A DNA stretch of 64,000 bases from Oopsacas minuta (Eukaryota; Animalia; Porifera), in assembly GCA_024704765.1 (NCBI GenBank), contig JAKMXF010000111.1, forward strand, positions 186,001-250,000, given 5' to 3'. Made by a program: the position numbers and the translations under genes. Each line of letters begins with the position of its first letter. Position 1 is the first letter of the stretch. Of the stretch, positions 1,943 through 18,497 are shown piece by piece. The notes beneath the pieces were generated by a model. That model did no database searches. It worked only from the letters and a program-made list of their open reading frames with translations, and had not been told where the DNA came from.

Positions 1943-2058
1943 AGCTGTTTCCAACCTGGATTCATGAACCCCTTGGTGTTCTACGGACGATAGCAGGGGG
2001 GCCACAGAATGTGTTAAAATTGGTATAGGGGTCCACGGTGAAAAGGTTAGGAGACGCT
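1943..2058. mobile_element. hAT/Charlie-like MITE remnant (family C)
   Basis: Ends resemble GTTTCCAACC...GGTTAGGAGAC and the core is CACGGACGATAGCAGGGG. Related copies at about 19100-19166 (reverse), 20218-20290, 49580-49690 (reverse) and 51864-51925 (reverse). Confidence 0.55.
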
Positions 2059-2597
2059 TACTTAGATTTTCCGAAATTCTTCCTATAAGTCAACTCCCGA
2101 GATAACAAAGTTGGTTATTACGAAAATACAGTTATAACGAAGTGATTCTTCATCCCCTATAGTTTGAAATAATTGATTTTACTCCGCTTACAATGAAATG
2201 AAACAGGTCCCAGCACTTCGTTATACTTAGAGCTTACTGCATTTATATTGACCAGACATATATTGATATCTCAATGTTTGTTTTCAAACTACCAGATGTC
2301 CATGTAACCTCCACATTTATCATCATTAGCCAGCTACTATTACTACCCAAAATCCTTCCCTATCATTATCTAATAAGTAATATGAACTACCCAGTGCTAC
2401 ATTCCAGGGCATGTCTCAGATAGTGATCGATTTGATTTAAATACTGCTGCTAATTCTTTATGACTACAATTTCAGTTCATTGTTTGGTATTACCAGAGTT
2501 TAACTCTAATTTTCTCAGAAACTGGTGAGTATAATTATTTTGAAATTTCCTTGACTTTGATACACAATTATTGTATAAAGATTTTTCATTCGTATTA

Positions 2598-2760
2598 CAA
2601 TCAACTCCGGTTATATCGAAGCTCAAAGGTCGAGCCAGCGATAATTACTTCGATATGCAATTTATTTTACTTTGGCTTGGGACCATATTTGAACAATTTC
2701 GGACTTCGATAAGAGCGGGTATTTCGAAATATCCGTGTTCGATATAACGGAAGTTGACTG
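2598..2760. mobile_element. TA-flanked pogo/Tigger-like MITE (family A)
   Basis: TIR CAATCAACTCCGGTTATATCGAA / TTCGATATAACGGAAGTTGACTG with TA on both sides. At least 8 related copies occur in the window. Confidence 0.75.
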
Positions 2761-2924
2761 TAATATTATGTCATTCTATACCCATTTTGTGTATTTAAGT
2801 ATGCATAAATATTCCATATAATCGACACAGCATTTTTATTTTTGTGTGTTTTCTTGAAATTAGTGATTAGAATATTTTAACATTTTCTAGTAAATATATA
2901 TTTTGAGTTATTTAATTGCATAAA

Positions 2925-4655
2925 ATGGCTAGTAAAGAAACAATTTCCGATCCGATCCCCAACAATGATAATATTGAAATAATTCCAACAATTGATGATG
3001 ACACACTCAACAAAACAATATGTCAAAACAACGATGGAATTGAGCTTGGACAAGTTGAGTTACTTCCGGGCTTAGAACCTGCAACTGCATACATTTATGG
3101 CATAGCCCTCGTATTTACATTGGGTGACAAAAAACGCACAACTCGTTCGAATAGTTATCATGTTAAACGCGAAAAGGCCAAAGTTGCATCAGTCAATAGT
3201 AAGGAAATCGGATTCGAAGAGAAGGCTAATCAACCACAATGTGTTATCATAAAATGGGAAGATTTTGTGAATTGTAGGTTACGTGAAAAAGGTCAGAAAA
3301 ATGAAAATTACGAATTGGAAATCATTAGTTTTGAAGTTTATGCTTTGACCAAGAAAATGCGGTATAAACGCCGTAGACGATGCGTGTTAACATTCGCAGT
3401 TGTCCCACAGTCGAATGAATCTCAAATACAAGCAAATTGGATTGACAAAATCACACTAACTGGCCGGAAATTTGTACAAAAAAAATTCGCGAATACTCGA
3501 GAACTGAACGACGAAGAATTGCTTGCGAAAAAACGCGTATTAATTCTATTGAACCCAGTCAGTGGAAAGCGTACAGGTTTGAAAATATTCCATGCACATG
3601 TTGAACAATTTTTGAATGATGCTGGAGTTGAATTTGAACTTTTCGTGACGCAACGTGCCAACCATGCTCGCGAAAGACTACATGACGAAGACTTAGATAA
3701 ATGGGATGGACTACTTTTCATGAGCGGAGACGGCCTTTTGAACGAAGGAGTGAACGGGTTACTTTCTCGCGAAGACGCGACCGTCGCAATACAGAAACCA
3801 TATGGGATAATACCTTGTGGAAGTGGAAATGCGATTGTTGGCGCTATTTTACATTATTCCCATGAAGATTATTCGCCGTTAAATGCCGCGTTTGTGTTCA
3901 CGAAAGGTTTATATAGTTTTTGCCTACACCCTATGGATGTAGGCTTATGCATACAGGGTGAACGAAAAACTTATTTTTGTTTGGTTGTCAATTGGGGATT
4001 TTCTGGTGATGTTGATATCGAATCGGAAGTTTTCAGGAAAATTGGGGAGTTTAGGTTCATTCTAGGCGCCATTTGGCGCGTTGTTGACAGACGTATTTAT
4101 CGTGCTGATATTTCATATTTGCCATATGACGAAATTCCAGATGTGGCTAAAGGCATAGGTTCAGGAAACGAGAATTCGATTCCTGGAAACGTAGAACCTG
4201 AAGTTACAATTTCTCTGCCAAATAATAGTGGAGTCGAAAACAACTTAAATTCTGAGAGTCCATCGCCCAAACCAATCGAGCCTTCATCCTGGATTGATTT
4301 ACCGGGACCCTTCACAAACGTATTACTCACACTTTCTCCAATGTTAAGTCATGAACTCTTTTGCGCGCCAAGCCATAAATTCGGTTGTGGCTACTTCACA
4401 CTAGTCAATATTCCCTATACGAATGTCAGTCGCATGCAGGTACTACAAATGGTCGATAGCTTTAAAGAAGACAATTTAGCCAATTTCGTTCGGCTTACTT
4501 TTACCAAAGTGAAGGCTTTTCGTTTTACGCCTATTTACCCGCCAAAAGGCTACATAGTAGTGGATGGGGAGGTGGTCCCTTATGAGACTTGTTCCGCTGA
4601 AATAACTGGTCATAAAATGTTTATTACGTCATTGTTTGAAAAAGAATCGCAGTGA
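2925..4655 (+). CDS. SPHK: Sphingosine kinase (DAGK catalytic family) with N-terminal extension
   Basis: Intronless ORF, ATG at 2925. Motifs LLNPVSGK, SGDGLLNEGVNG, IIPCGSGNA, DVDIESE and VVDGE match SphK conserved regions C1-C5. Confidence 0.9.
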   Translation: MASKETISDPIPNNDNIEIIPTIDDDTLNKTICQNNDGIELGQVELLPGLEPATAYIYGIALVFTLGDKKRTTRSNSYHVKREKAKVASVNSKEIGFEEKANQPQCVIIKWEDFVNCRLREKGQKNENYELEIISFEVYALTKKMRYKRRRRCVLTFAVVPQSNESQIQANWIDKITLTGRKFVQKKFANTRELNDEELLAKKRVLILLNPVSGKRTGLKIFHAHVEQFLNDAGVEFELFVTQRANHARERLHDEDLDKWDGLLFMSGDGLLNEGVNGLLSREDATVAIQKPYGIIPCGSGNAIVGAILHYSHEDYSPLNAAFVFTKGLYSFCLHPMDVGLCIQGERKTYFCLVVNWGFSGDVDIESEVFRKIGEFRFILGAIWRVVDRRIYRADISYLPYDEIPDVAKGIGSGNENSIPGNVEPEVTISLPNNSGVENNLNSESPSPKPIEPSSWIDLPGPFTNVLLTLSPMLSHELFCAPSHKFGCGYFTLVNIPYTNVSRMQVLQMVDSFKEDNLANFVRLTFTKVKAFRFTPIYPPKGYIVVDGEVVPYETCSAEITGHKMFITSLFEKESQ

Positions 4656-5581
4656 TATCCTCCATGCACAATTCTTTTTAGTTGTCGATTATATATTTAC
4701 TATCAATGTACATATACATGTATATTATTACAATATAATAGATGCAGTAAATATTTATACGCAATACCGTATTTCTCTGAATATACTTTCGTGGGCATTC
4801 TTCGTCCATATATTTTGTCATTTTTCGAAAATACCGAAGATTTTGGGAAACTAATTATCTATTTTGTGGTCAAATGTGGCATAATTTTCAACAAAAATAT
4901 TCTTATCGAGAGGTTGGTGATAAAATTTTATTCATAAGTTTTGGAGCTATTTTCTAGCCCCGGCGCTTATTTAGGGGAATAGAGTACTTCAGTTTTTTGT
5001 TAGGGATCACCAAGTTTGATTGGAGTTTTATTCTTAGTGAAGCCCTCCTGTATGTTTGAGTAATAGTTATACATAGGTTCACCAATTTAATGATTGCGAG
5101 CGTGATCTTGCAATCAACAGTATTGCCTTGGGTGCGGAATTTCAATTCCCATTCCCACAGGATTTCTGTTGGAATTCCCATACCCAAGGCAACCCTGGCA
5201 ATCAATGATCGCACGATCTCATGCCCTAATTTTAGAATATTCAGTGTAGTAAAATTATTCAAGAGGACATTACAGACTAAAATTGTCCTTAAAAGTTGTA
5301 ACTCACAATTAGGTAAAAATATTTCTACAAAATTATATGGAGAAGGTAAGTCTAGTGCAGAGATGAAACCGGTCGAGGTTTTGACAGACCGCTAGTTTGA
5401 ATTTTACTAAAGCAGTTAGTGATACATAACTCCCAAATATCGCGACTGTAACACGAAATCTCAACCTGGCGTATAATCCATATATGATATTAGATAATAA
5501 CCTGGTGGCTACCCCGGCTATAGAGAAAGAAGAACTTTTAATTCCTGCGATAAGGAATCTGGTCAATACACTGAGACATTT

Positions 5582-6982
5582 GAACTTGGAGAGGTTGAGA
5601 TTTATCCTGGAAAGAGGCGTGCAATCGCAAATTTATCTCAAAAATGTTTGATATTCAAATGGGTTGAACCGAAATCTTCTCATATGAAACCCAATTATTG
5701 TTCTATGGGAAGATTTCCTGAATATTTCCGCTGTAAAATTTGTGAAAAAGAAAGACGAGATTCTCCATGTGCAAATAATTAGCTACCCTGAATTTGCAGT
5801 TACAAAAAGGAATAGTAAAAACGGAAAAGGTTCGCTTTAGAATTTGCTCCAATTGCCTCTTTGATTGAAGTGGAATTCAAGGGAAACTGGATTGACAAAA
5901 TCAAAATTTCTGCTCGGCGTTTTTGTCGAGAATACGTATAAAAGCACTAGGTTTGTAAGCGACATGGAATTTCTTGAGAAAAAGCGCGTCTTAGTGCTCG
6001 TAAATCCATTCTCTGGCACTCGTTCTGCGCTTAAAAATTTCAAACGAGAAGTTGCGCCATTATTACACGAAGCTGGTGTAGATTTTGAACTTTTCGTGAT
6101 AGAAAGGGCCGGACATGCACACGAAAGACTTTAACACGAGGATTTACCATAATGGGATGCCTTGCTATTCATGAGTGGCGATGGCCTTGTGAGCGAAGCC
6201 TTGAACGGCTTGGTTTCTCGAGAAGATGCTAAGAATGCCTTACAAATACCTATTGGCATAATCCCATGCGGAAGTGGTAATACATTGATCGGTACCATAC
6301 TATGCTATTCACACGAGGATTATTCTATATTGAACGCAGCATTTGTGTTTGTTAAGGGCCTCTATGGCCCATCTCAATGCATAGATGCTGGGCTTTGTAC
6401 ACTGAGTGACGTCAACTTTTATTTTTTTACTAGTTTCAATTTTGGGTATGTAAATGATGTGACTTTTGAATCGGAGTTAGTTAGGAGGATTGGAGATATT
6501 CGTTTCACGTTCTTTGCTATTGGGAAGTTATTATTAAGCCGGCATGCCTATAAAGCTGATATATCATATTTACCCCATGATGCAGATGATGATACCATAG
6601 AAGATATGAGTGACTCCTCATGAGTCAAACTTGAAGAGCCATTCACATCTATTACTATTACCCTACTACCATTTCTTTTCATAAGTTATTCATCCAACCA
6701 ACGCTTCCAATCGGTAGCGGATATTTTACACTAGCCATCCTCCCCTATGAGAATATAAGCCGCATGGATATACTCAAACTTGTTGATAAAGCTAAGAATG
6801 ACGATATTAGCGTATTTTCTCCATTTTCCTACCACAAAATGAAAGCATTTCGTATCACACCCAAATACCCAAGGAATGGTAGTCAATCAACTGATGGGGA
6901 ATTGTTGACATATGAAACTTGCTACGGTGATATTTCGCCTTATAAGATGTCGATAATCTCAATGATTGAGAAAGAGCACTGA
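5582..6982 (+). pseudogene. Decayed tandem duplicate of sphingosine kinase
   Basis: Colinear with the upstream SphK from ELGEVEIYPG through WEDFLN, NWIDK, VNPFSG, SGDGL and GSGN to TDGE. In-frame stops TAA 6132, TAA 6150 and TGA 6621 (Trp in the intact copy). Frameshifts near 5835, 5921 and 6678. Confidence 0.85.
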
Positions 6983-7050
6983 ATTATTTACTATAGGAAA
7001 ATACTATTATTTTTTCAAATATATTTTTATTGCAACTCATATAGTATATA

Positions 7051-7430
7051 GGGGGATGCCCTAATGGCATGGACGATGTTCGACTTCAGCGTGGCCGTGC
7101 GAAATCTAGCAGTCTGAATATCATGAAAATTGGTACACATATACATTTTGGGTCGGAGATTTGTACCTCGGATATGAATTTTCTAAAGTGAATATTTCAC
7201 AATTTTCTATTTAAAATTTAATAGCAAACTAGAGATTAGGTTTCAACATGTTGTCAGGGGTATTTGGGTGCGTAAGGCTCCGATTTTGAGATTTTGAGAG
7301 TCTGAAAGTTACAAATTCAAAGATTTATATAATTGTCTTATGATTAATCATATTTTCACACCTTTTGCTAATATTTCAAAATGATGCTAGAGACTTCGTT
7401 TGAAAAGTTAGACAGGGGTAATTTTGGGTA
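7051..7430 (+). repeat. Interspersed repeat family B, unclassified
   Basis: Shares GATGCCC-AATGGCATGGAC...GGCCGTGCG-AATCTAG...TTTTGGGTCGGAGATTTG-ACCTCGG-TATG with 44420-44815 and 54692-54880. Confidence 0.7.
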
Positions 7431-7944
7431 ATTATTCGGAATCTTATTCGTAGGATTTGAGGATAAGCATTAAGGGACGAATAATATTGATTATCCTGGA
7501 ATATTTCTCAGATCCAAGAGCCCAAAATCAGTCGGAGCCGCGTGCATTCAGGTATCTACACGGGGTTCAAGCCCCCCCTCTGAAAAGATCAAAAACAAAT
7601 AACCCTGAGCTGCACTACCAGTCTGTCTGCTGGACATTTTTTTTATTATTTATCACTTCTTAACAACTATATTGTATTATAGGAATTCAGTTTTGGTTAA
7701 AAGGTATTAGGATATGGCTAATCATATGATAAATACTATTTCCGATCCTCAAATCGGACATGGAGAAGTGCGAATTTCGCCTGTAACATACATATGTAAT
7801 ATGCTGTCTGCACAGATTATACTTTTAGATTTTTTGTTCTTGTCCTCTCTCTATTTGATTAGTTTAACCATAGGTCACTTTTCAACATATGTATTATATA
7901 TTTTCACCTGTTTATTTATTTAGGACTGCAAATGGGAATTCAAC

Positions 7945-10900
7945 ATGTCCTTTATCTTTAGCAACAATTTTCTCCTCACAATAATCCTAGTAACTTTCAC
8001 AAATACAAACGGAAAACTATTATGGAATCGTTTTGAAGATTCTCAAGCACTTTGTAACGACTTTACGCGAAGCGGATATTTTATCTCTTCAAGCATAAAC
8101 CAATCTTTGCCTGATAATCAAACTCGATGGGTAATTTTCCTTGAAAGCGGTGGTGTATGTTCAACACCAGACGATTGCAATCGTAGATACACGACTTTCC
8201 ATGCAACCATGTCAACAAAAAACCAGCGAATATCAAGTGTAATGTCTAGTTTAGAATCTTTTTTCGAGCCTGAATTATTGTCGCAGGGCATTGAAGGGTT
8301 TGACATTCTCTCAGAAGATCCGACAGTAAATCCTACCTACCATGATTGCATACATGTCCTAGTCCCTTATTGTACCAGCGATCTTTGGTTTGGAATTGGC
8401 AATGATTTGAATACGACAAATTTCAATTTTTCCGATGCGAAAACCGAGAATTTTCAGTTCACATTTCGCGGTAGTATCCTGCTACAAAGTTTGTTTACAG
8501 AGTTGGCAGATAAATATAGATTGAATGATGCGGAAAAGGTTTTGTTTTCCGGTTCATCAGCTGGCGGAGTTGCTCTATACAACCACGCGAAAACCTTGCA
8601 AACTTTCCTTTCGCCATCAACCGAATTATCCATTCTCGGCGATTCATCTTGGTTCATAAATTTCCAGGAATCATTCGAACTCATAAAGGGGAGTGTACTG
8701 TACTATAATTTGCCTGCATTTCAATCATGTCGTCTTTTCCGGCATGGCGTCCCTTGTTGCCTATCAACACCCTGTATGTTAACGAATCCAAGTTTCTATC
8801 CGCCCGATTTGAAAACATTGATCGTTTTCAGTTTGTATGATATATATTTATTGAATCAAACTCTTGGCGAGTTTGACAAGGACAATTTGCTGATATTTCG
8901 GATACTACGCATTATCACTGAATTCGGTGGTGCTATGAATTATAGTCTCCAGTTAGTTGAATATTTAAATCCAAATTTCAGTTTTATCGCATCTTCATGT
9001 TTACAACACGTTTTCCTAGCGACCTCGTCTTTATGGGTGCAAGGTCCATTGGGTATATTTGCGGGAAATATCGTAGAATCTTTCGTTGATTCAAACTTTA
9101 ACCTTGCAATCAAGCCTGGAATATGGACAGAGTATGTGCTAAGAATCGATGAAATTATCTACAACATATCCTCCATCACAATCCGTGACGCAATAACTCA
9201 ATGGGCAAACGGTGCTACAATATCATACCGTGAGAGTTGTAAAAGCCCTCATTGCAATAGCAAATGCCCCGAAACAATTACACTAGGCCTCGGCACACCT
9301 TATTGGCCAGCTCCCGTCCAATATACGCTCATTTCCGTTGTCCTTGTTATTGTAATTTTATGTGTAATCCTAAAATTTAGTTTATCACTGAGATATTTAT
9401 GGATTAAACGCCAGCAAAGACGGTATGTTGAACGTCACCACAAAATGCGTGCGAATTTCGAGAAACGAGGTGGTGTTTCGAACTACCACATCATGAAATG
9501 TGATCCAGACGATACAGTGACACTCGCCTGTCTTGACATAGAATATAAAGTGAATATTTCCGCACTTGCTGCCAAAAGATTGCGCTATGAGGAGGAGGAT
9601 ATCGAGCCTTTAGTGCTGAAATCTCTTGACACTGTAACGGAGGACATGTTGAAAACACTCGATCGGAAACAAACACGGAGACGACATACTTTTTCAGGGA
9701 AATTGCCTGGTGAAACGTCCGTGAATGATTTCCAAAATATATCACCGATGCACCACCCGAAAGAAAGTAGTCTTGGGAGTATGAGTGATTTCCCGAATGA
9801 TGACGACACGATTTTACTCAAAAGTTCACCCCGAAAAATTAGAAAATCGCAAACTATGAATTTAAATGATAGCCCTTATAAGAAGAAAAGATTGGAAAAA
9901 GAAGATTCAGTTTTGTTTGAGACTTTACAAAGAGTTGCGTCATTCCCTCCTGAAGATAAGAAGAAAAAATCATCCATCATGAATCCGTTGAAACAAAATT
10001 CGCGAACAATTCTCAAAGGTATTTCCGCACTTTTCAATCCTGGCGAGTTAGTAGCAATCATGGGTCCATCTGGTTCTGGAAAAACAACCCTATTGGATTT
10101 ATTAACCGGTAGAAGACAAGTTGGGAGTATCGAAGGGCGTGTATTCGTAAACGGTTTTAATGTACAGTCGGTTCGCTCATGGTTTATAGCAAATACAGGG
10201 TATGTCTTACAACAGGCACAGCCATTTTACGAAGAATTGACTGTACGTGAGAACTTAACGCTATCAGCATTTATGCGTTTACCATCTTCAATGACATTAC
10301 ATCACAGACTGGAGAGAGTTGAGGAAGTGCTCCGTGAAACATTCCTTGTCGACCTAGCTGATACTAAGGTAGGTAGGCCTGGTGGTCCAGGGTTAAGTGG
10401 TGGTCAGAAACGGAGATTAAGTGTCGCGGTACAACTTCTGAAACGTCCTACCCTACTGCTCCTTGATGAGCCGACCTCTGGACTTGATGCCTCATCTTCC
10501 TACGAACTTTTGACATATTTAAACCATGTGGCTGCAAGCGATCGCACTGTCATTGTAACCATCCATCAACCTCGCCTCGAAATATTCCATCTTTTCAATA
10601 AAATTATTCTCCTATGCAGGGGGCAAATCGCCTACCATGGGGTTCCCGAGAAAGCTTACGAGGTGTTTGTGAACGCACATCGAGCATTTGAATACACACG
10701 TGGTTTTAAACTCCCTGATATTGAGAAACATAATCCAGCTGACGTCATCATGGATATATTAGGTAGTAAAGAGTCCCGCTCGGCTATTTTAAGTTATTAC
10801 AGACTGACTGAGGAGAGTGAAGAGATTTATGATGCAATTTGTCATGCACAGCATCGACGAAAAAAATATTTCGGCCCCGTGAATGAGACATATAAAGGAT

Positions 10901-12663
10901 TGAAATCATCATCATTTACGAGTCGTGTGACTTCATGGGAGGCGCGTGCATCTCTTCGTGCAACGTGGAGTCAGCTGATATACTTACCATTGATATTCAC
11001 GGTATACGGTTTGTTACTAGGTTCTGCATATAAACAAGCTTCTGAGGCTCTGTTAATAATCTCTGGATTCTGTGTGTACAGTGTTGCAAGTGCCCTGTTC
11101 ATGTTCCCAATAATGTATACGTATTTCCAACCCACCCTGAAAATATACGCACAAGAACGTGCTGACGGAGCAGGCATGGCTTCAGACCTCGTTTTCCAAG
11201 GTTTTGTTCGTTTCGTCAGCATGGCTTTTATACCTGTGATTCTATGCTGTGCTGTTCTCTACTTGTTCGTAGTGCAAATTGCTGCATATGATCCTTGGGT
11301 ATTTTTCCAGGTCGCTGTGATCAACTTAGCCCTGAATCAAACTTGGATTGCATTGTTAATGTTCATAATATTCTGTTTCCCGACAATTGCCCATCGTATT
11401 TCCCCCATCGTCGCGTCAATCGCCGGTTTTGCTGGTGGATTTTTCGTACCAATCCATCTCATGCCTGTCTACTACAATTGGCTATTTTTCATTAACCCCA
11501 ATTTCTATGGGTTTTCAGCTAGCGCACGGATAATACTAGATAACATGCAAGTAACTTGCGAATATGAATCTGAACTAGAATGCTATACATCATCTGCAAA
11601 CTATACTCTACAACAATTTGATTTCATTAACATTCAACCCTATCAACATATCCTCGTTTTGCTAGCTATGACCGTTATTTTCCTTTTCCTAGCGCATACA
11701 GCCTTATGGATTCGTTATTTCAATTGGCGTTTGGTTTTGAAATCCACTCGGTCTAAAGTTCGCTCTGATATTGTTGAGGAACTTGAAATTGAGACTTACA
11801 TGGGTGGTTCCACTGAATACAATCAATACACAACATCAACACATGAAAAACGTCATTCTTCAGTCATGCAGAATGTGAACAGTGAATTTAACTGGGAAAT
11901 TCCGCAGGAACAAGCCAGTCAAGATTGGCAACCACTTTCGAAACAATTGTCACCCATAAATAGTATTTGCCGTAATAGTATTGCATCAGGTGAACAAAGT
12001 TATGCAAATTTCTTTGAGAATCAAGCCATTAATTCGCCAATTGCTCCTGTAAAAAAATGTTATAATAAATCAACGCCGGATTTAGATTTGGAGGTTCTTG
12101 ATCGACCTAGTGGTAGTAGGCTAGTGAAAAATCGATCTTTCAAAGTGAAGCGGAAAGATCAGCGAATTGATGATCAATTATTCCGATCTAGTTCTTTCTC
12201 GAATTTAGACACAGTTGTCTCGGTAAAAACTCCTGTATTTCCGCAGAAAAATGCTGATCAACAAATCCGGGATCGTCAACAAAATATGTATAATCGCATT
12301 CATGAATACAATCTTGTTTCAAAAGTAGTTGAAGACGAAGTGTCGAAAGATTGGCAATTGACTTTCAGGAAAAAAGCTGCGAAAATATACACGAAAACGA
12401 CGAAAAAAATTGATAAAAAGTTACTGGAAGAGATGAATTTCGGTGAAATCGAGTCCACTAAATTGGACATGATGGGTCCTATAACGAGTAGAGTTTCAAA
12501 TTGTGAATCAATTCATGAAGAAGGTTACTCAACTTTACCGAAAAGTTTTCCGCGAGATGATGAATATATATTAGAGCCAAATTCCCCTTTGAAAAGTTTC
12601 GCGGGAATCGATCAAGATGACACAACCCCTGTGTTATTGGTGAACAGGCGAAGGAGTTTTTAA
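7945..12663 (+). CDS. Fusion protein: signal peptide + Notum/pectinacetylesterase-like carboxylesterase + TM helix + ABCG half-transporter (NBD then ABC2 membrane domain) + long cytosolic tail
   Basis: One uninterrupted 1572-aa ORF. Esterase motifs: FLESGGVC, VPYCTSDLW, GSSAGG, SLYD, SCLQH. ABC motifs: Walker A GPSGSGKTT, Q-loop YVLQQ, signature LSGGQKRR, Walker B and D-loop LLLLDEPTSGLD, H-loop TIHQP. About 6 hydrophobic segments follow, with the ABCG motif WLFFINPNFYGF. Confidence 0.9.
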   Translation: MSFIFSNNFLLTIILVTFTNTNGKLLWNRFEDSQALCNDFTRSGYFISSSINQSLPDNQTRWVIFLESGGVCSTPDDCNRRYTTFHATMSTKNQRISSVMSSLESFFEPELLSQGIEGFDILSEDPTVNPTYHDCIHVLVPYCTSDLWFGIGNDLNTTNFNFSDAKTENFQFTFRGSILLQSLFTELADKYRLNDAEKVLFSGSSAGGVALYNHAKTLQTFLSPSTELSILGDSSWFINFQESFELIKGSVLYYNLPAFQSCRLFRHGVPCCLSTPCMLTNPSFYPPDLKTLIVFSLYDIYLLNQTLGEFDKDNLLIFRILRIITEFGGAMNYSLQLVEYLNPNFSFIASSCLQHVFLATSSLWVQGPLGIFAGNIVESFVDSNFNLAIKPGIWTEYVLRIDEIIYNISSITIRDAITQWANGATISYRESCKSPHCNSKCPETITLGLGTPYWPAPVQYTLISVVLVIVILCVILKFSLSLRYLWIKRQQRRYVERHHKMRANFEKRGGVSNYHIMKCDPDDTVTLACLDIEYKVNISALAAKRLRYEEEDIEPLVLKSLDTVTEDMLKTLDRKQTRRRHTFSGKLPGETSVNDFQNISPMHHPKESSLGSMSDFPNDDDTILLKSSPRKIRKSQTMNLNDSPYKKKRLEKEDSVLFETLQRVASFPPEDKKKKSSIMNPLKQNSRTILKGISALFNPGELVAIMGPSGSGKTTLLDLLTGRRQVGSIEGRVFVNGFNVQSVRSWFIANTGYVLQQAQPFYEELTVRENLTLSAFMRLPSSMTLHHRLERVEEVLRETFLVDLADTKVGRPGGPGLSGGQKRRLSVAVQLLKRPTLLLLDEPTSGLDASSSYELLTYLNHVAASDRTVIVTIHQPRLEIFHLFNKIILLCRGQIAYHGVPEKAYEVFVNAHRAFEYTRGFKLPDIEKHNPADVIMDILGSKESRSAILSYYRLTEESEEIYDAICHAQHRRKKYFGPVNETYKGLKSSSFTSRVTSWEARASLRATWSQLIYLPLIFTVYGLLLGSAYKQASEALLIISGFCVYSVASALFMFPIMYTYFQPTLKIYAQERADGAGMASDLVFQGFVRFVSMAFIPVILCCAVLYLFVVQIAAYDPWVFFQVAVINLALNQTWIALLMFIIFCFPTIAHRISPIVASIAGFAGGFFVPIHLMPVYYNWLFFINPNFYGFSASARIILDNMQVTCEYESELECYTSSANYTLQQFDFINIQPYQHILVLLAMTVIFLFLAHTALWIRYFNWRLVLKSTRSKVRSDIVEELEIETYMGGSTEYNQYTTSTHEKRHSSVMQNVNSEFNWEIPQEQASQDWQPLSKQLSPINSICRNSIASGEQSYANFFENQAINSPIAPVKKCYNKSTPDLDLEVLDRPSGSRLVKNRSFKVKRKDQRIDDQLFRSSSFSNLDTVVSVKTPVFPQKNADQQIRDRQQNMYNRIHEYNLVSKVVEDEVSKDWQLTFRKKAAKIYTKTTKKIDKKLLEEMNFGEIESTKLDMMGPITSRVSNCESIHEEGYSTLPKSFPRDDEYILEPNSPLKSFAGIDQDDTTPVLLVNRRRSF

Positions 12664-12912
12664 ATATATGAATTTTTGAATCCTTTTATGTAAATAATGT
12701 TTTGAATATGTAAATATGAAATTCGTGTGTTTTCTATAATTTTTTGAATGTCTAATTTCCGGAATTTATTTTTGGGAATATATTTACATGGAGTATGCGA
12801 AGCATAGCATTAGCTTGATTTTCTCAACATTTACCGACTTTTTGTACTATATGTGGAAGCTTCTTAGTCACTCCATGGTAAAAACGGGCTCAACCACCTA
12901 ATAATTCATGTA

Positions 12913-13068
12913 CAATCAACTTCCGTTATATCAAAGCTCAAGGGGCCGTGAAAATCAATCCGATATAAGCGGAGTTCGATATTACCGATCGAATATATGT
13001 TACCTTGACGTTCAGTTTAGGACCATAATTGACAATTTCAGACCTCGTTATAAGTGGCTATTTGATTG
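12913..13068. mobile_element. Family A pogo-like MITE
   Basis: TA-CAATCAACTTCCGTTATATC...TTTGATTG-TA, homologous to 2598-2760. Confidence 0.65.
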
Positions 13069-13241
13069 TAACGAGGGTTTCCTCGAATTGTAATGTCACG
13101 AATAGTATGTATTCCATTATTTTATGTTTTTGGCATGAAACATCCATATAATATAAATACTAATTTGGCACCAACAACCTATAACGAACTTGTCCTTATT
13201 AAGCGAAATAAATTTTCAATATTTCTAGCTAATTATCTAAG

Positions 13242-16200
13242 ATGTCTGAGGCAAAACCAGCTCCACAGCCAGTAGAAGAAATTATTCTCGATTTTGACGA
13301 AAAGGACCTCAATTTTTCCTTCAAACAATTGCGAAAAATCGCACTTGGAGATGATATATCACAATACAATTTCACCAGAGGTGATAAACTATCCCTCATA
13401 TGTTCATCAAACCTCTACGGGATCATATTCATCGCGAAACCTAACGGTTTTATCGTATTCCCCTCGAGCACCCTCGTGAATTGTCACGAGTCAAATTACA
13501 AACTACCTCTGAGCCAAACTGTTACTGCCAATCAGTCGGGTATAAAAGCCAGACACTACGAAATTGGTTCTCCATTCTTCCTGTCTCTCAATTCCGATAA
13601 CTCAGTTCTAATTTGCCTAACCCGTAATACACAGAATGTTATTACAGCTGCTTTTTATGATATTTCAAGCTTCAGTCCTGAATCTTCAAATTCCAATCCA
13701 AATGCTATTTTCCCATTGGCAGACAATCCAAATTTGCTACTCACAGATTTCCAATGGAATCCGACCAAACCCGAATCTTTCGCAGTGTGTTTTTCTAACG
13801 GCCAATCACATTTACTACAATTCAAACTGCCGCAAAGTATGCGGCATTTGTCACTTCTAAACTCGAAAACATCTTCATTCTGTTGGAGTCCGAAAGGTAA
13901 ACATATTGCCATCGGCACAATAGATGGCACAATCGAACAATTGAGTTGCGAAGAGGAAAATGCAAAATTCTTCAAACGCCACCCAAAAGTAGCTAATCTC
14001 GAATCTTTACAAGCTAAAGTGGTTCATTTAAAATGGATTTCAACTTATCAATTTGGCTTAGTTTACAGTATACAAACAGACAGTGGCGAAACAGAGCAAA
14101 TTTTCCTGTTGAAACATACCAAAACAAGCGAACAACCTGTCATAGTAAATTTCGCTGATTTATACGTGCAATCTGAAAATGCGCCAACTTTCTATTACAC
14201 TGAACTATTTCAAACTCAGAAAATTCTACTCACAACAACAGGCCTTGCTTCTGAAGTATTCGTGCTCGCGAATCAAGGTATTCCTACGAATGTAGGTGAT
14301 TGGTTTTACGCGAATTTAGAAGAGAGCAGTCGTGCGGAGCTACCTCTTGATGGGACGGAGGAATCTTTTACAATGGGTCTAGCGATTGATACAACTTCTC
14401 AAACAGCCATACCCACAGACAAAGAACAACTCCCTCCACATCCAATTTTACTTTTACTCACAACCAAGGGAGTGCTCTGCCCTTTTCATATGATATACGA
14501 AGGTATGTCGAGTTTAATTGAACCTCCGAGAGTGTTAAAATCCGCGAAACATTCTTTCAATCCACAGGAAGTCGCGAAAAATCTATCTACTACAACAGTA
14601 ACCGTTACAGGTGGTAATACGCCTACAACCGCGAAAAGTACTACCTATGCCATCATCCCAGACGCACAACCTTCAACTGAACCTATACCATCACAAACCA
14701 TGGGTGAACATCCAAAAATAGTACCACTAACAATATCCCAAGCTACTCTACCAACTGGGTTAATACCGGCACCTTCTACGTCATCACAACACTATACAAT
14801 ACCAAAGATACCTGCAGGAAATACACAGAAAGTTCCGCCTACCAATTTGCCAATTCATCCACCAACTCATGCTATTGTCGATACTGTAAAATCTGCTCCT
14901 GCTATTGTGGGTAATACAAGTATTGCACAACCTGCTTTATTCAATATAACGCCGAATGATAGTACTAGTAAACAACAAGTACTAAGACAGGAAATACAGC
15001 AATCACAGGGACAACAACCTAAACAGCATACACAACCTCAAGGACAACAACCAAACCAACAACAACTTCATGCACAACAACAGCAAACGCCAGTTATACA
15101 GCAAGTACTACAACCTAAACAGCAACAGCATCCTCCAGTTACCCAGCAAGCCCAACAACAACAACAACAACAACAAACTCCAGTTATAAAGCAAGTACTA
15201 CAACCTAAACTGGAACAGCAACCTCCAGTTACTCAGCAAGCCCAAGCACAACAACAACAAACGCCAGTTATACAGCAAGTACTACAACCTAAACAACAAC
15301 AACAACAACCTCCAGTTACCCAGCAAGCGCATGCACAACCACAACATCATCATCATCAACAACCTTCAGTAATGCAGCAATTACAAGCACCACAACCCAA
15401 ACAGCAACTACAACCAATTACCCCACAGAATCCCAACACTCTTTCACATGCTAACCTCAATTTCTCACCTCCACAGGGTGACTTCAGAGCATTAATACAA
15501 CCTCAAACATCACCTACGAAGATACTACAACCCACCAGTACTCATATCCCTAAACAAACAGTATTGCCATCTACTCAACAAACTACACAAAACTTTGTGC
15601 AACCACAATCAATACAACAATCTCCTCTAACACAAAATACTGTATCACTGACGATGCCAGCACCATCTCCATTAGAAATAGAAGTTAGATATGAAACACA
15701 CATTCGTAACGAAATTGATGAATTTTCGGAGGATTTGGAAACGCTTAAGAATAAACTACGTGCGAAATTCGGTGATTTTGATGATGCACAGTGCAAATTG
15801 AAGGACCTTGTTGGTTCAGATGAAGAGAAAAATAAAATGTATCGCGACACGGCCAAATTACATCAAGAATTGGACTTTACTATAAGATCAGCTGATGAAA
15901 TGAACCAAATACTGTCGACCATCCGAAATGAAGGTTTTCATATTCAAGAGAAAATAGAGGATGCGAATAAAGCTAAAAAATGGATCTCATCTGCGAAATT
16001 CAATTCGTTCATCGCTGCTACACCATTAGACCCTATATCTGAGGAAAAACGCAAAATTCTCATACAAACATATACAACTTTGGATCAGAGATTACAGGAA
16101 GTAGAACTTTGTATGGAAGACTTGCTGATTCGTTCAAATGATACAAACGATTATCACTCAGCTGTAAAAACGATCAAATCTCAAGAAGATGTACTCGTTA

Positions 16201-18497
16201 AACTTCACTCGAAATTAGACCAGTTAAGCGAACAGGTAGAAACGGTTAAAGTCAATCGCCAGCTTTCCCGAATGAACCTTTCTGCGTCCTGCATTCACCC
16301 TTTCGAGCTATTAAACAAATCCCTTGAAAAACGTCATTTTAACTACAAAATACAGAATGACCGTATAGTTGAATTGAAAGATTATCTATACAACAGACCT
16401 ACGCCGCGTGTAATTAAACCACGTAATCCGGCCAATACACTCAATATTCCACGCACAGTCAAAGTCCCGTCCAAGCCTAAATCAGATATTCGAACTTCTA
16501 AACCCAATACGCCGTCACCTATAAGTTTACCCCAACCGAACCATGGATATAAATTGCTTGTTTCGCCGCAGGGTGAGTTTTTCATTTCTCCTACCCCCCA
16601 GTCACTACCTGATGGATGTGTCTCTGTCGACGCGTCGCATTTACAGAAACTTTCCCCAACAAAATCACAGATATCTCCGCAAAAGGGTCAATCAATGACC
16701 GTACCTGTGCAAGATGGTTATGATCGTACATCAATTCCGAAATTTATGGTCGAACACAAACCAGAACAAATATCACCATCAAAACACATTCCACAGCCTA
16801 TATTACCCAGTCAACAACAACAAAATCAAGTAATATATCAACATTCGCCAATCGGTCAACAACCTTTACGAAATCAACCACCACAAATACCTCAAGAAAT
16901 ACGTCAACAACATTCGCAAACACAGGCACAACTCCTTCAACAACCTCCAATACCAAATAGTCAACCACAACAAACTGTTAGTAAGTCGCCACCTCAAAAA
17001 CTACCTCCTACACAACTACAACAACAAACAATCCCTCCTCAACCAAATCCCCCTCATAAAGATCCACCACGTGTAAACCGTATCCTAGATTTTTCATCTC
17101 CACCCAAGAATTCACCGCCTGAAGCAAGCTCCCCTCCCTTTACATCCGTAAAAACAGCTGATCAAGCTCAAGAAAAACCTGCTCCCAATGTGAACCCATT
17201 CGCTGACCCTTCCTGTCCTTTTCTCAGCCCTGGACCTTTACAAGGGAACAAACAATCAGTGACGTCATCTAATGAACCAACTCAGAACAAACAAAACCGT
17301 GATGCGAAAATAAAAACTGATTCACCACCTAAATCACCATCTGACATACAATTATGCTCACTATTAACTGCTCCAGAACCTAAATCAAACAAAGATCCAG
17401 GCAAAAATGTGAATTTAATTCAAACTACAAAACCTCCATCGAAATTGCTACAAAGTACAAATGCTGAATCGAAAACTTCACCGACGAAATCAATTCCTTT
17501 AGACGAATCCCAAACCGTGAATATTCCGAAAAACACAGACAAAACTCCACATACAAAAGATCTGAATTTAACTCAAACAATTAATATCTCAGAAATAGGA
17601 AATAATACTAAAGTTCCTGCGGAAATTACACCGGCTATTATTTCGCAAAATCCACCACAGCCAAATATAAATCCTCAAATAGTTCAGCAACCATTACAAC
17701 CCACCACCCCTGTGCGTACAAATGAGGCAATTCAAACCCCACGGGTTCAGGTCACATCAATTGAGGGTGATTCTGAGATGCAAGATGATCAGGATTACGG
17801 AACTTCATTACAGGCGATATCTTTGGGTGGCGGGCTAGACGGTGTCGCAAAACCAGCCCCCCCTCCCATGGGTGCGAATATTCGCAATCCCTTTGGTGGA
17901 AACACGTCTGGAGAAGGTGCAAGCGCTAATATTCCGTCAATTTGGGGTAGTCCAAATCCTAATCAGTTCTCTCGAACGAATCAGCCTCAAGTACAAGCTC
18001 AACCTCCCAATATTGGTTTTGGAGGGGGACAACCGAATTTTGGCGGTACACCCACTTTATTTCAAGGTCCTTCCCTTCTACAGGGGATCGGAGGTACCCA
18101 ACAGAAGTTATTTGGCCATAATACAGATGCTTTAAGTTTCGGCTCAATTGCCGGGAACTCTCCTCCAAAACAAGCCCCATTCGGCCAGCAAACAAATCCT
18201 ATGAAGCAACCGGGACCTTTTGGGCAACAAACGGCCGCTTTCGGACAACAACCAGGACCTTTCGGCACTCAACCTGCCCCTTTCGGGCAACAACCGGCAT
18301 CTTTCGGACAACAGCCAGGACCTTTCGGCACTCAACCTGCCCCTTTCGGGCAACAACCGGGATTATTTGGACAAACACAAGATATGGGATTCGGCAGTGT
18401 CGCACAAGGTCAAGGATTTGGCGGCCAATCAAGTGGTAGTATGAGTTCCCAGGTAAATGAAATGAAAGGAAAAGCTTTCACTTCTTACAGGTCTTGA
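13242..18497 (+). CDS. NUP214: Nuclear pore complex protein Nup214/CAN
   Basis: Intronless 1751-aa ORF. N-terminal beta-propeller (DFQWNP, CWSPKGKHIAIG, ESFTMGLAID, PPHPILLLLTTKGVLCPF), central coiled coil with PLDP motif, C-terminal FG repeats ending FTSYRS. Confidence 0.88.
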   Translation: MSEAKPAPQPVEEIILDFDEKDLNFSFKQLRKIALGDDISQYNFTRGDKLSLICSSNLYGIIFIAKPNGFIVFPSSTLVNCHESNYKLPLSQTVTANQSGIKARHYEIGSPFFLSLNSDNSVLICLTRNTQNVITAAFYDISSFSPESSNSNPNAIFPLADNPNLLLTDFQWNPTKPESFAVCFSNGQSHLLQFKLPQSMRHLSLLNSKTSSFCWSPKGKHIAIGTIDGTIEQLSCEEENAKFFKRHPKVANLESLQAKVVHLKWISTYQFGLVYSIQTDSGETEQIFLLKHTKTSEQPVIVNFADLYVQSENAPTFYYTELFQTQKILLTTTGLASEVFVLANQGIPTNVGDWFYANLEESSRAELPLDGTEESFTMGLAIDTTSQTAIPTDKEQLPPHPILLLLTTKGVLCPFHMIYEGMSSLIEPPRVLKSAKHSFNPQEVAKNLSTTTVTVTGGNTPTTAKSTTYAIIPDAQPSTEPIPSQTMGEHPKIVPLTISQATLPTGLIPAPSTSSQHYTIPKIPAGNTQKVPPTNLPIHPPTHAIVDTVKSAPAIVGNTSIAQPALFNITPNDSTSKQQVLRQEIQQSQGQQPKQHTQPQGQQPNQQQLHAQQQQTPVIQQVLQPKQQQHPPVTQQAQQQQQQQQTPVIKQVLQPKLEQQPPVTQQAQAQQQQTPVIQQVLQPKQQQQQPPVTQQAHAQPQHHHHQQPSVMQQLQAPQPKQQLQPITPQNPNTLSHANLNFSPPQGDFRALIQPQTSPTKILQPTSTHIPKQTVLPSTQQTTQNFVQPQSIQQSPLTQNTVSLTMPAPSPLEIEVRYETHIRNEIDEFSEDLETLKNKLRAKFGDFDDAQCKLKDLVGSDEEKNKMYRDTAKLHQELDFTIRSADEMNQILSTIRNEGFHIQEKIEDANKAKKWISSAKFNSFIAATPLDPISEEKRKILIQTYTTLDQRLQEVELCMEDLLIRSNDTNDYHSAVKTIKSQEDVLVKLHSKLDQLSEQVETVKVNRQLSRMNLSASCIHPFELLNKSLEKRHFNYKIQNDRIVELKDYLYNRPTPRVIKPRNPANTLNIPRTVKVPSKPKSDIRTSKPNTPSPISLPQPNHGYKLLVSPQGEFFISPTPQSLPDGCVSVDASHLQKLSPTKSQISPQKGQSMTVPVQDGYDRTSIPKFMVEHKPEQISPSKHIPQPILPSQQQQNQVIYQHSPIGQQPLRNQPPQIPQEIRQQHSQTQAQLLQQPPIPNSQPQQTVSKSPPQKLPPTQLQQQTIPPQPNPPHKDPPRVNRILDFSSPPKNSPPEASSPPFTSVKTADQAQEKPAPNVNPFADPSCPFLSPGPLQGNKQSVTSSNEPTQNKQNRDAKIKTDSPPKSPSDIQLCSLLTAPEPKSNKDPGKNVNLIQTTKPPSKLLQSTNAESKTSPTKSIPLDESQTVNIPKNTDKTPHTKDLNLTQTINISEIGNNTKVPAEITPAIISQNPPQPNINPQIVQQPLQPTTPVRTNEAIQTPRVQVTSIEGDSEMQDDQDYGTSLQAISLGGGLDGVAKPAPPPMGANIRNPFGGNTSGEGASANIPSIWGSPNPNQFSRTNQPQVQAQPPNIGFGGGQPNFGGTPTLFQGPSLLQGIGGTQQKLFGHNTDALSFGSIAGNSPPKQAPFGQQTNPMKQPGPFGQQTAAFGQQPGPFGTQPAPFGQQPASFGQQPGPFGTQPAPFGQQPGLFGQTQDMGFGSVAQGQGFGGQSSGSMSSQVNEMKGKAFTSYRS
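15075..15330 (+). repeat. Coding tandem repeat in Nup214 (3 x QQQQTPVIQQVLQPK...PPVTQQA)
   Basis: Three units of about 85-90 bp sharing CCAGTTATA-AGCAAGTACTACAACCTAAAC, separated by variable CAA tracts. Confidence 0.85.
18238..18363 (+). repeat. Coding 63-bp tandem duplication in the Nup214 FG region
   Basis: Two near-identical copies encoding FGQQPGPFGTQPAPFGQQP. Confidence 0.85.

What the first reader, a model, noticed from the sequence alone, without database searches (positions are those of the whole stretch)
7945..12663. Single-ORF fusion of a Notum-type carboxylesterase ectodomain to a complete ABCG half-transporter
Seen: one intronless frame, so the fusion is not a gene-model artefact. 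It encodes a signal peptide, a Notum/pectinacetylesterase domain (about 8014-9290), one TM helix (about 9319-9390), a complete NBD (Walker A at 10063, catalytic Glu, H-loop), an ABC2 membrane domain and a tail of about 300 aa. The esterase triad looks intact: Ser of GSSAG at 8557, Asp of SLYD, His of SCLQH. Known: Notum is a secreted deacylase that removes palmitoleate from Wnt; ABCG proteins dimerise and move lipids and sterols; ABCGs with ectodomains exist (fungal ADP1, EGF-like). I know of no described Notum-ABCG fusion. Inference: a surface machine that couples extracellular ester hydrolysis to ATP-driven transport of the lipid substrate or product.
Basis: partly seen in the sequence, partly recalled or inferred. 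Interest (0 to 1): 0.88.

Follow-up and report, generated by a model that had tools for sequence, protein, structure and literature searches.

The report
Notum-like esterase fused to ABCG transporter
This glass-sponge gene really does encode one protein that joins an outward-facing Notum-like esterase to a complete ABCG lipid-type pump. It belongs to an apparently undescribed gene family shared by sponges, a comb jelly, a coral and at least one marine protist.

Summary
ORF 7945-12663 (+) encodes 1572 aa:
- a signal peptide;
- a PAE/Notum-family esterase domain (Pfam PF03283, 103 bits);
- one TM helix;
- an ABCG nucleotide-binding domain with all motifs intact;
- a six-helix ABC2 membrane domain;
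- a tail of about 310 aa, with no Pfam match.

The esterase triad (S205, D299, H355) aligns with the Ser, Asp and His of Notum. Fold models match Notum (target TM about 0.69) and ABCG2/ABCG25/ABCG1 (target TM 0.73-0.85).

It is not an assembly artefact. Six other glass-sponge assemblies carry the same uninterrupted ORF. Short-read contigs cross the junction without differences. One run with an RNA-like depth profile covers the whole ORF at 20-40 times the flank depth, with no internal joints.

It is not unique. The same architecture occurs in all four sponge classes, a ctenophore, a coral (a tandem pair), and intronless contigs of marine plankton eukaryotes.

The ectodomain groups apart from true Notum, which the same phyla also have. 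The topology (TMH1-NBD-TMH6) is that of fungal ADP1, with an enzyme in place of the EGF repeats.

I found no paper describing the family. The coupling of transport to ester hydrolysis remains inference. I class it as a new variant of a known kind, of moderately high interest.

The parts
2496..2524 (+). 3' end of a non-coding leader exon of the gene. It is followed by a GTGAGT donor at 2525.
   Evidence: A 28-nt loose end of a contig of the RNA-like run X4, lying just before 7923, matches window 2496-2523 exactly. The donor is read from the sequence.
2525..7923 (+). 5'-UTR intron of about 5.4 kb, ending in the acceptor AG at 7922-7923. It contains the sphingosine-kinase-like ORFs 2916-4655 and 6162-6623 on the same strand.
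   Evidence: SphK1 match E 3e-52; DAGK_cat.
7945..12663 (+). Complete coding sequence, 1572 aa plus stop, with no intron in the coding region.
   Evidence: Run X4 covers 7788-12637 at depth 470-2500, against 0-65 in the flanks, with no joints.
7945..8016 (+). Signal peptide, residues 1-24.
   Evidence: Hydrophobic N-terminus, residues 1-19. This region is poorly conserved, 29-42% among hexactinellids.
8017..9300 (+). PAE/Notum-like alpha/beta-hydrolase ectodomain, residues 25-452, with 8 N-glycosylation sequons.
   Evidence: Pfam PAE 103.4 bits. Notum E 2.9e-17 by sequence. AF2 model pTM 0.82; Foldseek top 50 hits are all Notum, E 5e-17, target TM about 0.69. Sequons.
8557..8559 (+). Catalytic Ser205 (GSSAG).
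   Evidence: Aligned with the nucleophile Ser of Notum. Invariant in the metazoan fusion proteins compared.
8839..8841 (+). Catalytic Asp299.
   Evidence: Aligned with the Notum Asp column; invariant.
9007..9009 (+). Catalytic His355.
   Evidence: Aligned with the Notum His column. Conserved except in Oscarella paralogue a (Asn) and the Tara protist (Ala).
9238..9270 (+). Juxtamembrane Cys motif, C432-x4-C437-N-x2-C441-P442. Human Notum has the same motif at the end of its folded domain.
   Evidence: The three Cys are invariant in every fusion protein compared, protists included. Human Notum's HCNPSCP aligns with it (second stretch).
9310..9387 (+). TM0, the single membrane-spanning helix that tethers the ectodomain (residues 456-481).
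   Evidence: Hydropathy peak 3.04. The AF2 model shows one continuous helix over residues 456-507.
9388..9561 (+). Cytosolic continuation of the TM0 helix, plus a conserved strand (residues 527-538, with C529 and Y534 nearly invariant) that I read as the first strand of the NBD.
   Evidence: strand at model residues 78-89; 81-94% identity among hexactinellids.
9562..9996 (+). Insert of about 145 aa, residues 540-684, modelled with low confidence. It is rich in Lys, Ser and Asp and may be regulatory.
   Evidence: pLDDT below 50 for model residues 91-235. Yet it is 69-82% identical among hexactinellids. Composition.
9997..10734 (+). Nucleotide-binding domain. Walker A at 10063-10086, signature at 10393-10407, Walker B with catalytic Glu842 at 10453-10470, H-loop His874 at 10564-10566.
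   Evidence: It is 92-96% identical among hexactinellids.
10915..11724 (+). ABCG-type membrane domain: elbow helix, TM1-TM6, and the extracellular loop EL3 (11470-11637). EL3 carries two conserved Cys (C1205, C1213) and one sequon (N1219).
   Evidence: Pfam ABC2_membrane. Hydropathy. Model and Foldseek matches to ABCG2, ABCG25, ABCG1 and ABCG5/8, target TM 0.73-0.85.
11725..12660 (+). C-terminal tail of about 310 aa, residues 1261-1572. It should be cytosolic by topology and has no recognised domain.
   Evidence: No Pfam hit. 43-64% identity among hexactinellids and 10-14% to other sponges. A weakly conserved basic stretch around the RDRQQNMYNRI segment.
7932..7961 (+). Out-of-frame 9-codon upstream ORF that overlaps the main ATG.
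   Evidence: Read from the sequence. Not tested further.

Best explanation
**What it is (shown).** An expressed glass-sponge gene for a type-I-anchored, Notum-like serine esterase fused through one TM helix to a complete, catalytically competent ABCG half-transporter. The topology is TMH1-NBD-TMH6, as in fungal ADP1. It belongs to an old family found in Porifera, Ctenophora, Cnidaria and some marine protists.

**How it most likely works (inferred).** Like other ABCG half-transporters, it should dimerise. That would place two esterase domains on the exoplasmic side, directly above the exit of the translocation pathway and its EL3 loops. ATP hydrolysis would flop or expel a lipidic ester, or a lipid-linked acyl or acetyl compound. 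The cargo would pass to the pocket of the tethered esterase, which would cut the ester and release the product outside the cell or into a lumen. In short, this is trans-side processing of the cargo of an ABC exporter.

**Other inferred features.** The rigid TM0 helix runs into the first strand of the NBD. The conserved 145-aa insert and the 310-aa tail are candidate sites for regulation and sorting.
For: **Architecture, motifs and topology.**

**Esterase.**
- The triad aligns with Notum's Ser232, Asp340 and His389 (Notum residues from PMC8172013).
- The fold matches Notum.

**Transporter.** ABCG by sequence (ABCG1 E 4e-50 over residues 24-592 of the 601-aa query) and by fold.

**Exoplasmic orientation of the esterase.** There is a signal peptide, eight sequons in the ectodomain, one sequon and two conserved Cys in EL3, and an odd count of 1+6 TM helices.

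**The link is selected for.**
- The fusion is kept in four sponge classes, a ctenophore and a coral.
- All metazoan ABCG parts form one clade at 100.
- The triad is kept in nearly all members.

**Expression.** One run with an RNA-like depth profile covers both halves at similar depth with no joints.

**Topology precedent.** ADP1 is described as TMH1-NBD-TMH6 with an N-terminal ectodomain (PMC6647914).
Against: - No substrate, location or activity is known for any member.
- ABCG direction (outward) is assumed from characterised relatives.
- Two members have lost triad residues: Oscarella paralogue a (His to Asn) and the Tara protist (Ser to Glu, His to Ala). Hydrolysis is therefore not essential in every member.
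- Notum's pocket-mouth Trp128 and Tyr129 are Gly70 and Val71 here, so the substrate probably differs from palmitoleate.
- The RNA evidence comes from fragmentary contigs of a run whose type is not on record. No single molecule was shown to span the junction.
- I could not model the contact between the ectodomain and the EL3 loops, because the protein exceeds the 1200-aa limit.
Confidence: 0.45

Rival explanations
1. Esterase first. The tethered Notum-like domain deacylates an extracellular lipidated protein or lipid, as Notum does with Wnt. The ABCG part then handles the released fatty acid, or remodels the surrounding outer leaflet to present the substrate.
For: Notum is the closest solved relative. 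The triad is intact. The juxtamembrane Cys motif is shared with Notum.
Against: The same phyla keep separate Notum-group proteins: Sycon notum2-like, an Oscarella pearsei protein, and Oculina notum1a-like. The fusion ectodomains group apart from them. The pocket-mouth Trp and Tyr are not conserved. Characterised ABCGs move substrates outward, which does not suit uptake of a product.
Confidence: 0.2
2. Acceptor or sensor domain. The ectodomain mainly binds the transported lipid, playing the part that an external acceptor plays for ABCG1 or ABCG5/8. Hydrolysis would be secondary or dispensable.
For: Paralogues and protist members with a broken triad keep the fold, the Cys motif and the fusion.
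Against: Ser, Asp and His are kept across sponges, the ctenophore and all the other metazoan members compared. That argues that catalysis is selected in most of them, including this one.
Confidence: 0.15
3. The same machine works in an internal compartment (Golgi, endosome, lysosome or vacuole-like lumen) rather than at the cell surface. This concerns location and does not exclude any of the mechanisms above.
For: Topology cannot tell lumen from outside. There is a long tail, cytosolic by topology, that could carry sorting signals. From my own knowledge, untested here, some ABCGs act in endosomes.
Against: Nothing bears on it directly. It is simply untested.
Confidence: 0.3
4. Artefact. Two neighbouring genes were merged by misassembly or by a chance open frame.
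For: None found.
Against: Six independent hexactinellid assemblies carry the same ORF, one of them with conserved neighbours. Logan short-read contigs cross 9300-10000 without differences. The linker region is itself 69-94% conserved. RefSeq models in Sycon, Oscarella and Corticium join both halves across introns.
Confidence: 0.01

Closest known systems
Notum (palmitoleoyl-protein carboxylesterase; PDB 4UYU, 4UZ1, 4UZQ and others)
   Same: Same Pfam family (PF03283) and the same alpha/beta-hydrolase fold (Foldseek E 5e-17, target TM about 0.69). The Ser-Asp-His triad sits in the same columns. There is a small Ser/Gly run (SGG) in the place of the GG of Notum's oxyanion-hole stretch, and an HCNxxCP-type Cys motif at the end of the domain. 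Both are exoplasmic.
   Different: Notum is a secreted protein of about 500 aa. This domain is membrane-tethered and fused to a pump. It groups outside the named Notums, with moderate support (82-93). Identity is about 21% by the structure-based alignment. Trp128 and Tyr129 at the pocket mouth are Gly and Val. There are several large low-confidence insertions.
Fungal ADP1 (ABCG half-transporter with an N-terminal EGF-repeat ectodomain)
   Same: The same unusual topology: signal peptide, ectodomain, TMH1, NBD, TMH6 (PMC6647914). Fungal proteins that I take to be ADP1-like, from their lengths of about 950-1190 aa, are among the best non-family hits (P0015, E 6e-81).
   Different: The ectodomain here is an enzyme, not EGF repeats; Pfam finds no EGF domain. 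The ABCG parts are only about 30% identical. The fungal clade is separated from the fusion clade by branches with support 97-100.
ABCG1, ABCG2, ABCG5/8 and plant ABCG25/ABCG16 (solved half-transporters)
   Same: NBD-then-TMD order, all ATPase motifs, six TM helices, and an EL3 loop with conserved Cys and a glycosylation sequon. Target TM 0.73-0.85.
   Different: Identity is 22-26%. This protein has an extra N-terminal TM helix with an ectodomain, a 145-aa insert between the first two NBD strands, and a 310-aa C-terminal tail.
Peptidase-containing ABC transporters (PCATs) of bacteria. This is a functional analogy from my own knowledge, not tested here.
   Same: An ABC exporter covalently fused to a hydrolase that is thought to process its own cargo.
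   Different: The PCAT protease is cytoplasmic, on the cis side, and the transporter has a different fold type. Here the hydrolase sits on the trans side of an ABCG-type exporter. No homology is implied.

Membership tests
ABCG subfamily of ABC transporters | NBD lies N-terminal to the membrane domain on one chain (reverse order) | tested here: met
   ABC_tran at 690-845 precedes ABC2_membrane at 1005-1194. Colinear alignment to ABCG1 residues 94-655, E 4e-50.
ABCG subfamily of ABC transporters | Intact Walker A, Q-loop, signature, Walker B with catalytic Glu, and H-loop | tested here: met
   GPSGSGKT at 707, YVLQ at 753, LSGGQ at 817, LLLLDE at 837-842, IHQP at 873.
ABCG subfamily of ABC transporters | ABC2-type membrane domain with six helices and the ABCG fold | tested here: met
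   PF01061, 31.1 bits against a cut-off of 26.9. Hydropathy. Foldseek matches to ABCG2, ABCG25, ABCG1 and ABCG5/8, E 1e-27 to 1e-23, target TM 0.73-0.85.
ABCG subfamily of ABC transporters | Works as a homo- or heterodimer | not testable with these tools
   Inferred from the family. Only one such gene was seen for this genome.
PAE/Notum family (PF03283) | Profile match above the curated threshold | tested here: met
   103.4 bits against a cut-off of 26.6, profile positions 18-330 of 355.
PAE/Notum family (PF03283) | Ser-Asp-His catalytic triad in the family's columns | tested here: met
   S205, D299 and H355 align with the Ser, Asp and His of rodent, coral and mayfly Notum. Notum triad as given in PMC8172013.
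PAE/Notum family (PF03283) | Carboxylesterase activity | not testable with these tools
   Needs an enzyme assay.
Notum proper (orthologue of the Wnt deacylase) | Groups with named Notum sequences in a tree | tested here: not met
   Named Notums, together with the stand-alone Sycon, Oscarella and Oculina proteins, fall on the other side of the tree from the fusion ectodomains. Support is 95 (FastTree) and 82-93 (mixture model), so moderate only.
Notum proper (orthologue of the Wnt deacylase) | Pocket-mouth Trp128 and Tyr129, and a palmitoleate-sized hydrophobic pocket | tested here: not met
   The pairwise alignment puts Gly70 and Val71 opposite Trp128 and Tyr129. The pocket volume was not examined.
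Notum proper (orthologue of the Wnt deacylase) | Secreted, soluble protein | tested here: not met
   The domain is followed by TM0 and the ABCG half on the same chain.
ADP1-type ABCG | TMH1-NBD-TMH6 topology with an N-terminal ectodomain | tested here: met
   Definition from PMC6647914.
ADP1-type ABCG | EGF-repeat ectodomain | tested here: not met
   Pfam finds no EGF family; the ectodomain is PAE.
ADP1-type ABCG | ABCG part groups with fungal ADP1-like proteins | tested here: not met
   The fungal clade (100) and the fusion clade (100, or 97 with the protists) are separate.

The most novel reading that the evidence does not exclude
The PAE-ABCG fusion arose once, before animals. The ABCG parts of the marine-protist fusions group with the animal ones at 97, although they sit on long branches. 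It was kept in sponges, ctenophores and cnidarians and lost in Bilateria. It would be the first eukaryotic ABC exporter that processes its own cargo with a covalently tethered enzyme on the trans side. Its ectodomain lineage is the sister of Notum, so the soluble Wnt deacylase and this membrane machine would share an ancestral exoplasmic lipid-esterase.
Probability: 0.25. Interest if true: 0.85.

Novelty: new variant of a known kind. Interest (0 to 1): 0.64.

Why it matters
ABC exporters are normally studied as pumps whose cargo is released unchanged. A hydrolase held permanently at the exit would be a new working principle for the eukaryotic ABCG family.

It would also give a handle on lipid or secondary-metabolite export in sponges and corals, which are rich in acetylated and acylated lipids.

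For the Notum and Wnt field, it reveals a large, conserved sister lineage of Notum in early-branching animals that is membrane-bound. This bears on how the secreted Wnt deacylase arose.

The family is ready for testing. Full-length sequences with intact catalytic residues are available from at least eight named species.

Tried and rejected
- **Literature.** Eight full-text searches found no description of the fusion. They combined pectinacetylesterase/ABCG/fusion, Notum/sponge/ABC transporter, ABCG/Porifera/Ctenophora, Notum/ABCG/half-transporter, PF03283/PF00005, Notum/Porifera/origin, Amphimedon/Nematostella/ABCG, and ADP1. This covers open-access papers and bioRxiv only.
- **ESM Atlas.** The feature search with the whole protein returned only generic ABCG clusters and no fusion cluster.
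- **Tara contig.** An Atlas search with its exportin-like neighbour gave only 'Eukaryota'. At 70-73% GC with compact intronless genes, the lineage stays unknown.
- **Profile search with the ectodomain alignment.** It was saturated by about 120 unnamed PAE ORFs of roughly 450 aa from ENA assemblies. Some are sister to named fusion proteins in the tree, so I read many of them as first exons of fusion genes, but I could not name their organisms. Whether the family is absent from Bilateria and Placozoa is therefore not settled.
- **Coral 'ABCG without PAE'.** P0265 (Oculina, 837 aa) is not a domain loss. tblastn finds PAE and TM0 exons at L002 6980-8890, just upstream on the same strand, so the annotation splits one gene.
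- **Second 5' loose end.** A 23-nt loose end at 7922 in run X4 was found neither in the window nor in the orthologous locus L001. It may be another leader exon or a trans-spliced leader; this is unresolved.
Full report
**1. Observation**

The window holds one uninterrupted ORF, 7945-12663 on the + strand, of 1572 codons. Pfam finds three families on this one chain:
- PAE (PF03283), residues 31-366, E 1.8e-29, 103.4 bits against a cut-off of 26.6;
- ABC_tran, residues 690-845, E 1.1e-28;
- ABC2_membrane, residues 1005-1194, 31.1 bits against 26.9.

A hydropathy scan and motif search give:
- a hydrophobic N-terminus;
- a strong single helix at about 456-481;
- the usual set of ABCG membrane helices between about 1008 and 1259;
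- eight N-glycosylation sequons in the ectodomain and one in the last extracellular loop;
- GPSGSGKT at 707, YVLQ at 753, LSGGQ at 817, LLLLDE at 837-842 and IHQP at 873.

**2. Not an artefact, and expressed**

A word-indexed search of 5.8 billion proteins returned the window's own protein and six others of 1572-1580 aa. These are 70-81% identical over 99-100% of the length and come from other assemblies. One of them sits in a locus with the same neighbours: a GCV_T-like gene, a DAGK_cat gene, the fusion, and a large ORF of about 1770 aa.

In my trees the protein is sister to the demosponge Ephydatia (98-100), which fits.

Four public runs of one sample hold the region. Three have flat depth through gene and flanks, as DNA would. 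Their contigs cross the domain junction (7613-10827, 9410-13200, 8732-10162) with no differences.

The fourth run, X4, has depth 470-2500 from 7788 to 12637 but only 0-65 outside. It shows no internal joints. It therefore behaves as RNA, although its type is not on record.

One of its contigs carries, just before 7923, 28 letters that match window 2496-2523 exactly. That site is followed by a GTGAGT donor, and 7922-7923 is an AG acceptor behind a T-rich tract. So the mRNA has a non-coding leader exon and a 5.4-kb intron in its 5' UTR. Only the coding region is intronless.

The X4 contigs are short. A single molecule spanning both halves has not been shown.

**3. The two halves**

*Esterase.* Against all PDB sequences, the only significant matches of residues 1-480 are Notum (E 2.9e-17). 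An AlphaFold2 model built from 12 family members (pTM 0.82, mean pLDDT 71.7) has Notum as all of its top 50 Foldseek hits (E 5e-17, target TM about 0.69).

In a profile alignment, S205, D299 and H355 fall in the columns of the Ser, Asp and His of rodent, coral and mayfly Notum. Human Notum's triad is Ser232, Asp340, His389 (PMC8172013).

Two differences and one shared feature stand out:
- The Notum stretch GGWY, part of the oxyanion hole and pocket mouth, is SGGV here. The aromatic Trp128 and Tyr129 are therefore replaced by Gly70 and Val71.
- A Cys motif, C-x4-C-N-x2-C-P, lies just before the membrane. Its three Cys are invariant in all fusion proteins compared, and the motif aligns with HCNPSCP at the end of Notum's folded domain.

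*Transporter.* Residues 660-1260 match Pdr5 (E 5.6e-59), ABCG1 (E 4e-50, colinear over nearly the full chain), ABCG2, ABCG25 and ABCG5/8.

A model of residues 450-1262 (pTM 0.72) shows:
- one continuous helix over 456-507, which is TM0 running on into the cytosol;
- a strand at 527-538, the conserved ACLDxxY segment. I read it as the first strand of the NBD, because in ABCG proteins a strand precedes the P-loop strand;
- a low-confidence stretch over 540-684;
- a standard NBD and ABCG membrane domain.

Foldseek gives ABCG2, ABCG16, ABCG25, ABCG5/8 and ABCG1 at E 1e-27 to 1e-23, with target TM 0.73-0.85.

Identity among hexactinellid orthologues, by region:

| Region | Identity |
|---|---|
| NBD | 92-96% |
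| Membrane domain | 86-91% |
| Esterase | 71-79% |
| 'Disordered' insert | 69-82% |
| Tail | 43-64% |

**4. How widespread it is**

The same three Pfam families on one chain occur in:
- Ephydatia muelleri;
- Corticium candelabrum;
- Oscarella lobularis (two genes);
- Sycon ciliatum (three genes).

The ctenophore Bolinopsis microptera has a 988-aa model carrying PAE and ABC_tran that ends inside the membrane domain.

In the coral Oculina patagonica, a 1417-aa PAE+ABC_tran+ABC2_membrane gene lies directly upstream of an '837-aa ABCG'. tblastn shows that this second gene also has PAE and TM0 exons just upstream (L002 6980-8890). The coral therefore has a tandem pair of fusions.

An exhaustive HMMER search with the ectodomain over 1.84 billion representatives gave 1719 hits. 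Among the best 150, about 30 representatives of 50%-identity clusters are ORFs of 560-800 aa made of a PAE domain, TM0 and the first 45-55 residues of the NBD. They end just after Walker A. The coral gene has an exon boundary at the same place, so these are first exons of fusion genes cut off at a conserved intron.

Three further fusions come from intronless metagenome contigs (P0244, P0168, P0240). P0244 is on three marine-metagenome contigs, two of them labelled TARA. They have 70-73% GC and an exportin-like neighbour, so the source is a planktonic eukaryote.

**5. Trees**

*ABCG part* (82 rows, IQ-TREE quick, LG+G4). All animal fusion proteins form one clade at 100. Two 'no-PAE' members are the Oculina 837-aa model, shown above to be a split gene model, and its close unnamed relative. 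Two more are short metagenomic ORFs. The Tara and JGI protist fusions join this clade at 97, against 64 other ABCGs. They sit on long branches, so a single origin is suggested but not shown.

*Ectodomain.* Named Notums are rodent, mayfly and Oculina notum1a-like. With the stand-alone Sycon 'notum2-like' and an Oscarella pearsei protein, they fall together. They are apart from the fusion ectodomains, with support 95 in FastTree and 82-93 with a mixture model. The ectodomain is therefore Notum-like but a paralogous lineage, and the same animals keep a separate Notum.

*Triad.* It is kept in all animal members checked except Oscarella paralogue a (His to Asn). The Tara protist has Ser to Glu and His to Ala.

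**6. Mechanism**

*Shown.*
- The orientation of the parts: esterase exoplasmic, NBD and tail on the cytosolic side.
- Intact catalytic residues in both halves.
- Long-term conservation of the link.

*Inferred.*
- Dimerisation, as in all ABCG half-transporters.
- Outward transport.
- Hand-off of a lipidic ester from the exit of the pump to the tethered esterase, which cuts it.

I give the identity at least 0.95 and this coupling about 0.4. The rivals are:
- esterase first, as in Notum;
- a mainly binding or acceptor role for the ectodomain, suggested by the members with a broken triad;
- action in an internal lumen rather than at the surface, which is compatible with any of the others.

**7. 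Comparison and novelty**

The topology is that of fungal ADP1, TMH1-NBD-TMH6 with an N-terminal ectodomain (PMC6647914). However, the ectodomain is an enzyme and the ABCG part is not in the fungal clade.

No paper in the searched library describes the family. Database names are 'uncharacterized protein' or generic ABCG names.

I class it as a new variant of a known kind: real, conserved and undescribed, but not unique to this genome, and with an untested function.

Noticed in passing
window 2916-4655 and 6162-6623 (+): A sphingosine-kinase-like gene (SphK1 E 3e-52; DAGK_cat) lies on the same strand inside the 5.4-kb 5'-UTR intron of the fusion gene. It is either nested there or shares the leader exon and promoter. 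The same gene order is kept in another glass sponge (L001).
   Followed up: partly
window 7922-7923: A second, different 23-nt loose end precedes the same acceptor in the RNA-like run. It is found neither in the window nor in L001. It could be an alternative distant leader exon or a trans-spliced leader.
   Followed up: partly
window 7932-7961 (+): A 9-codon out-of-frame upstream ORF overlaps the main start codon. Its ATG has a purine at -3 and G at +4.
   Followed up: no
window 7580-7646: A short high-copy repeat. Contig word depth is about 25 times the neighbouring depth in the DNA-like runs, and many contigs break there with different continuations.
   Followed up: no
window 13242-18497 (+): A neighbouring intronless 1751-aa ORF. 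It has weak WD40/beta-propeller hits near the N-terminus, Gln/Pro-rich 45-nt-period repeats at 15000-15326, and 21-nt-period Phe-Gly repeats at 18207-18374. GC and AT skew are strong. It looks like an FG-nucleoporin of the Nup214/Nup159 type, and it is conserved as a 1772-aa ORF in L001.
   Followed up: partly
window 1958-2015 and 19090-19147: A 58-nt inverted repeat, 79% complementary, whose arms are 17 kb apart. The arms bracket the sphingosine kinase, fusion and FG-repeat genes. It may be two copies of a dispersed element.
   Followed up: no
L002 1-16576 (Oculina patagonica): The coral has two PAE-ABCG genes in tandem. The annotation splits the second into a 314-aa protein with no named domain and an 837-aa ABCG.
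   Followed up: yes
L003 936-5396 (Tara marine metagenome contig, 70-73% GC): A protist PAE-ABCG fusion with about 245 extra N-terminal residues. Its esterase has lost the nucleophile Ser (Glu) and the His (Ala).
   Followed up: partly
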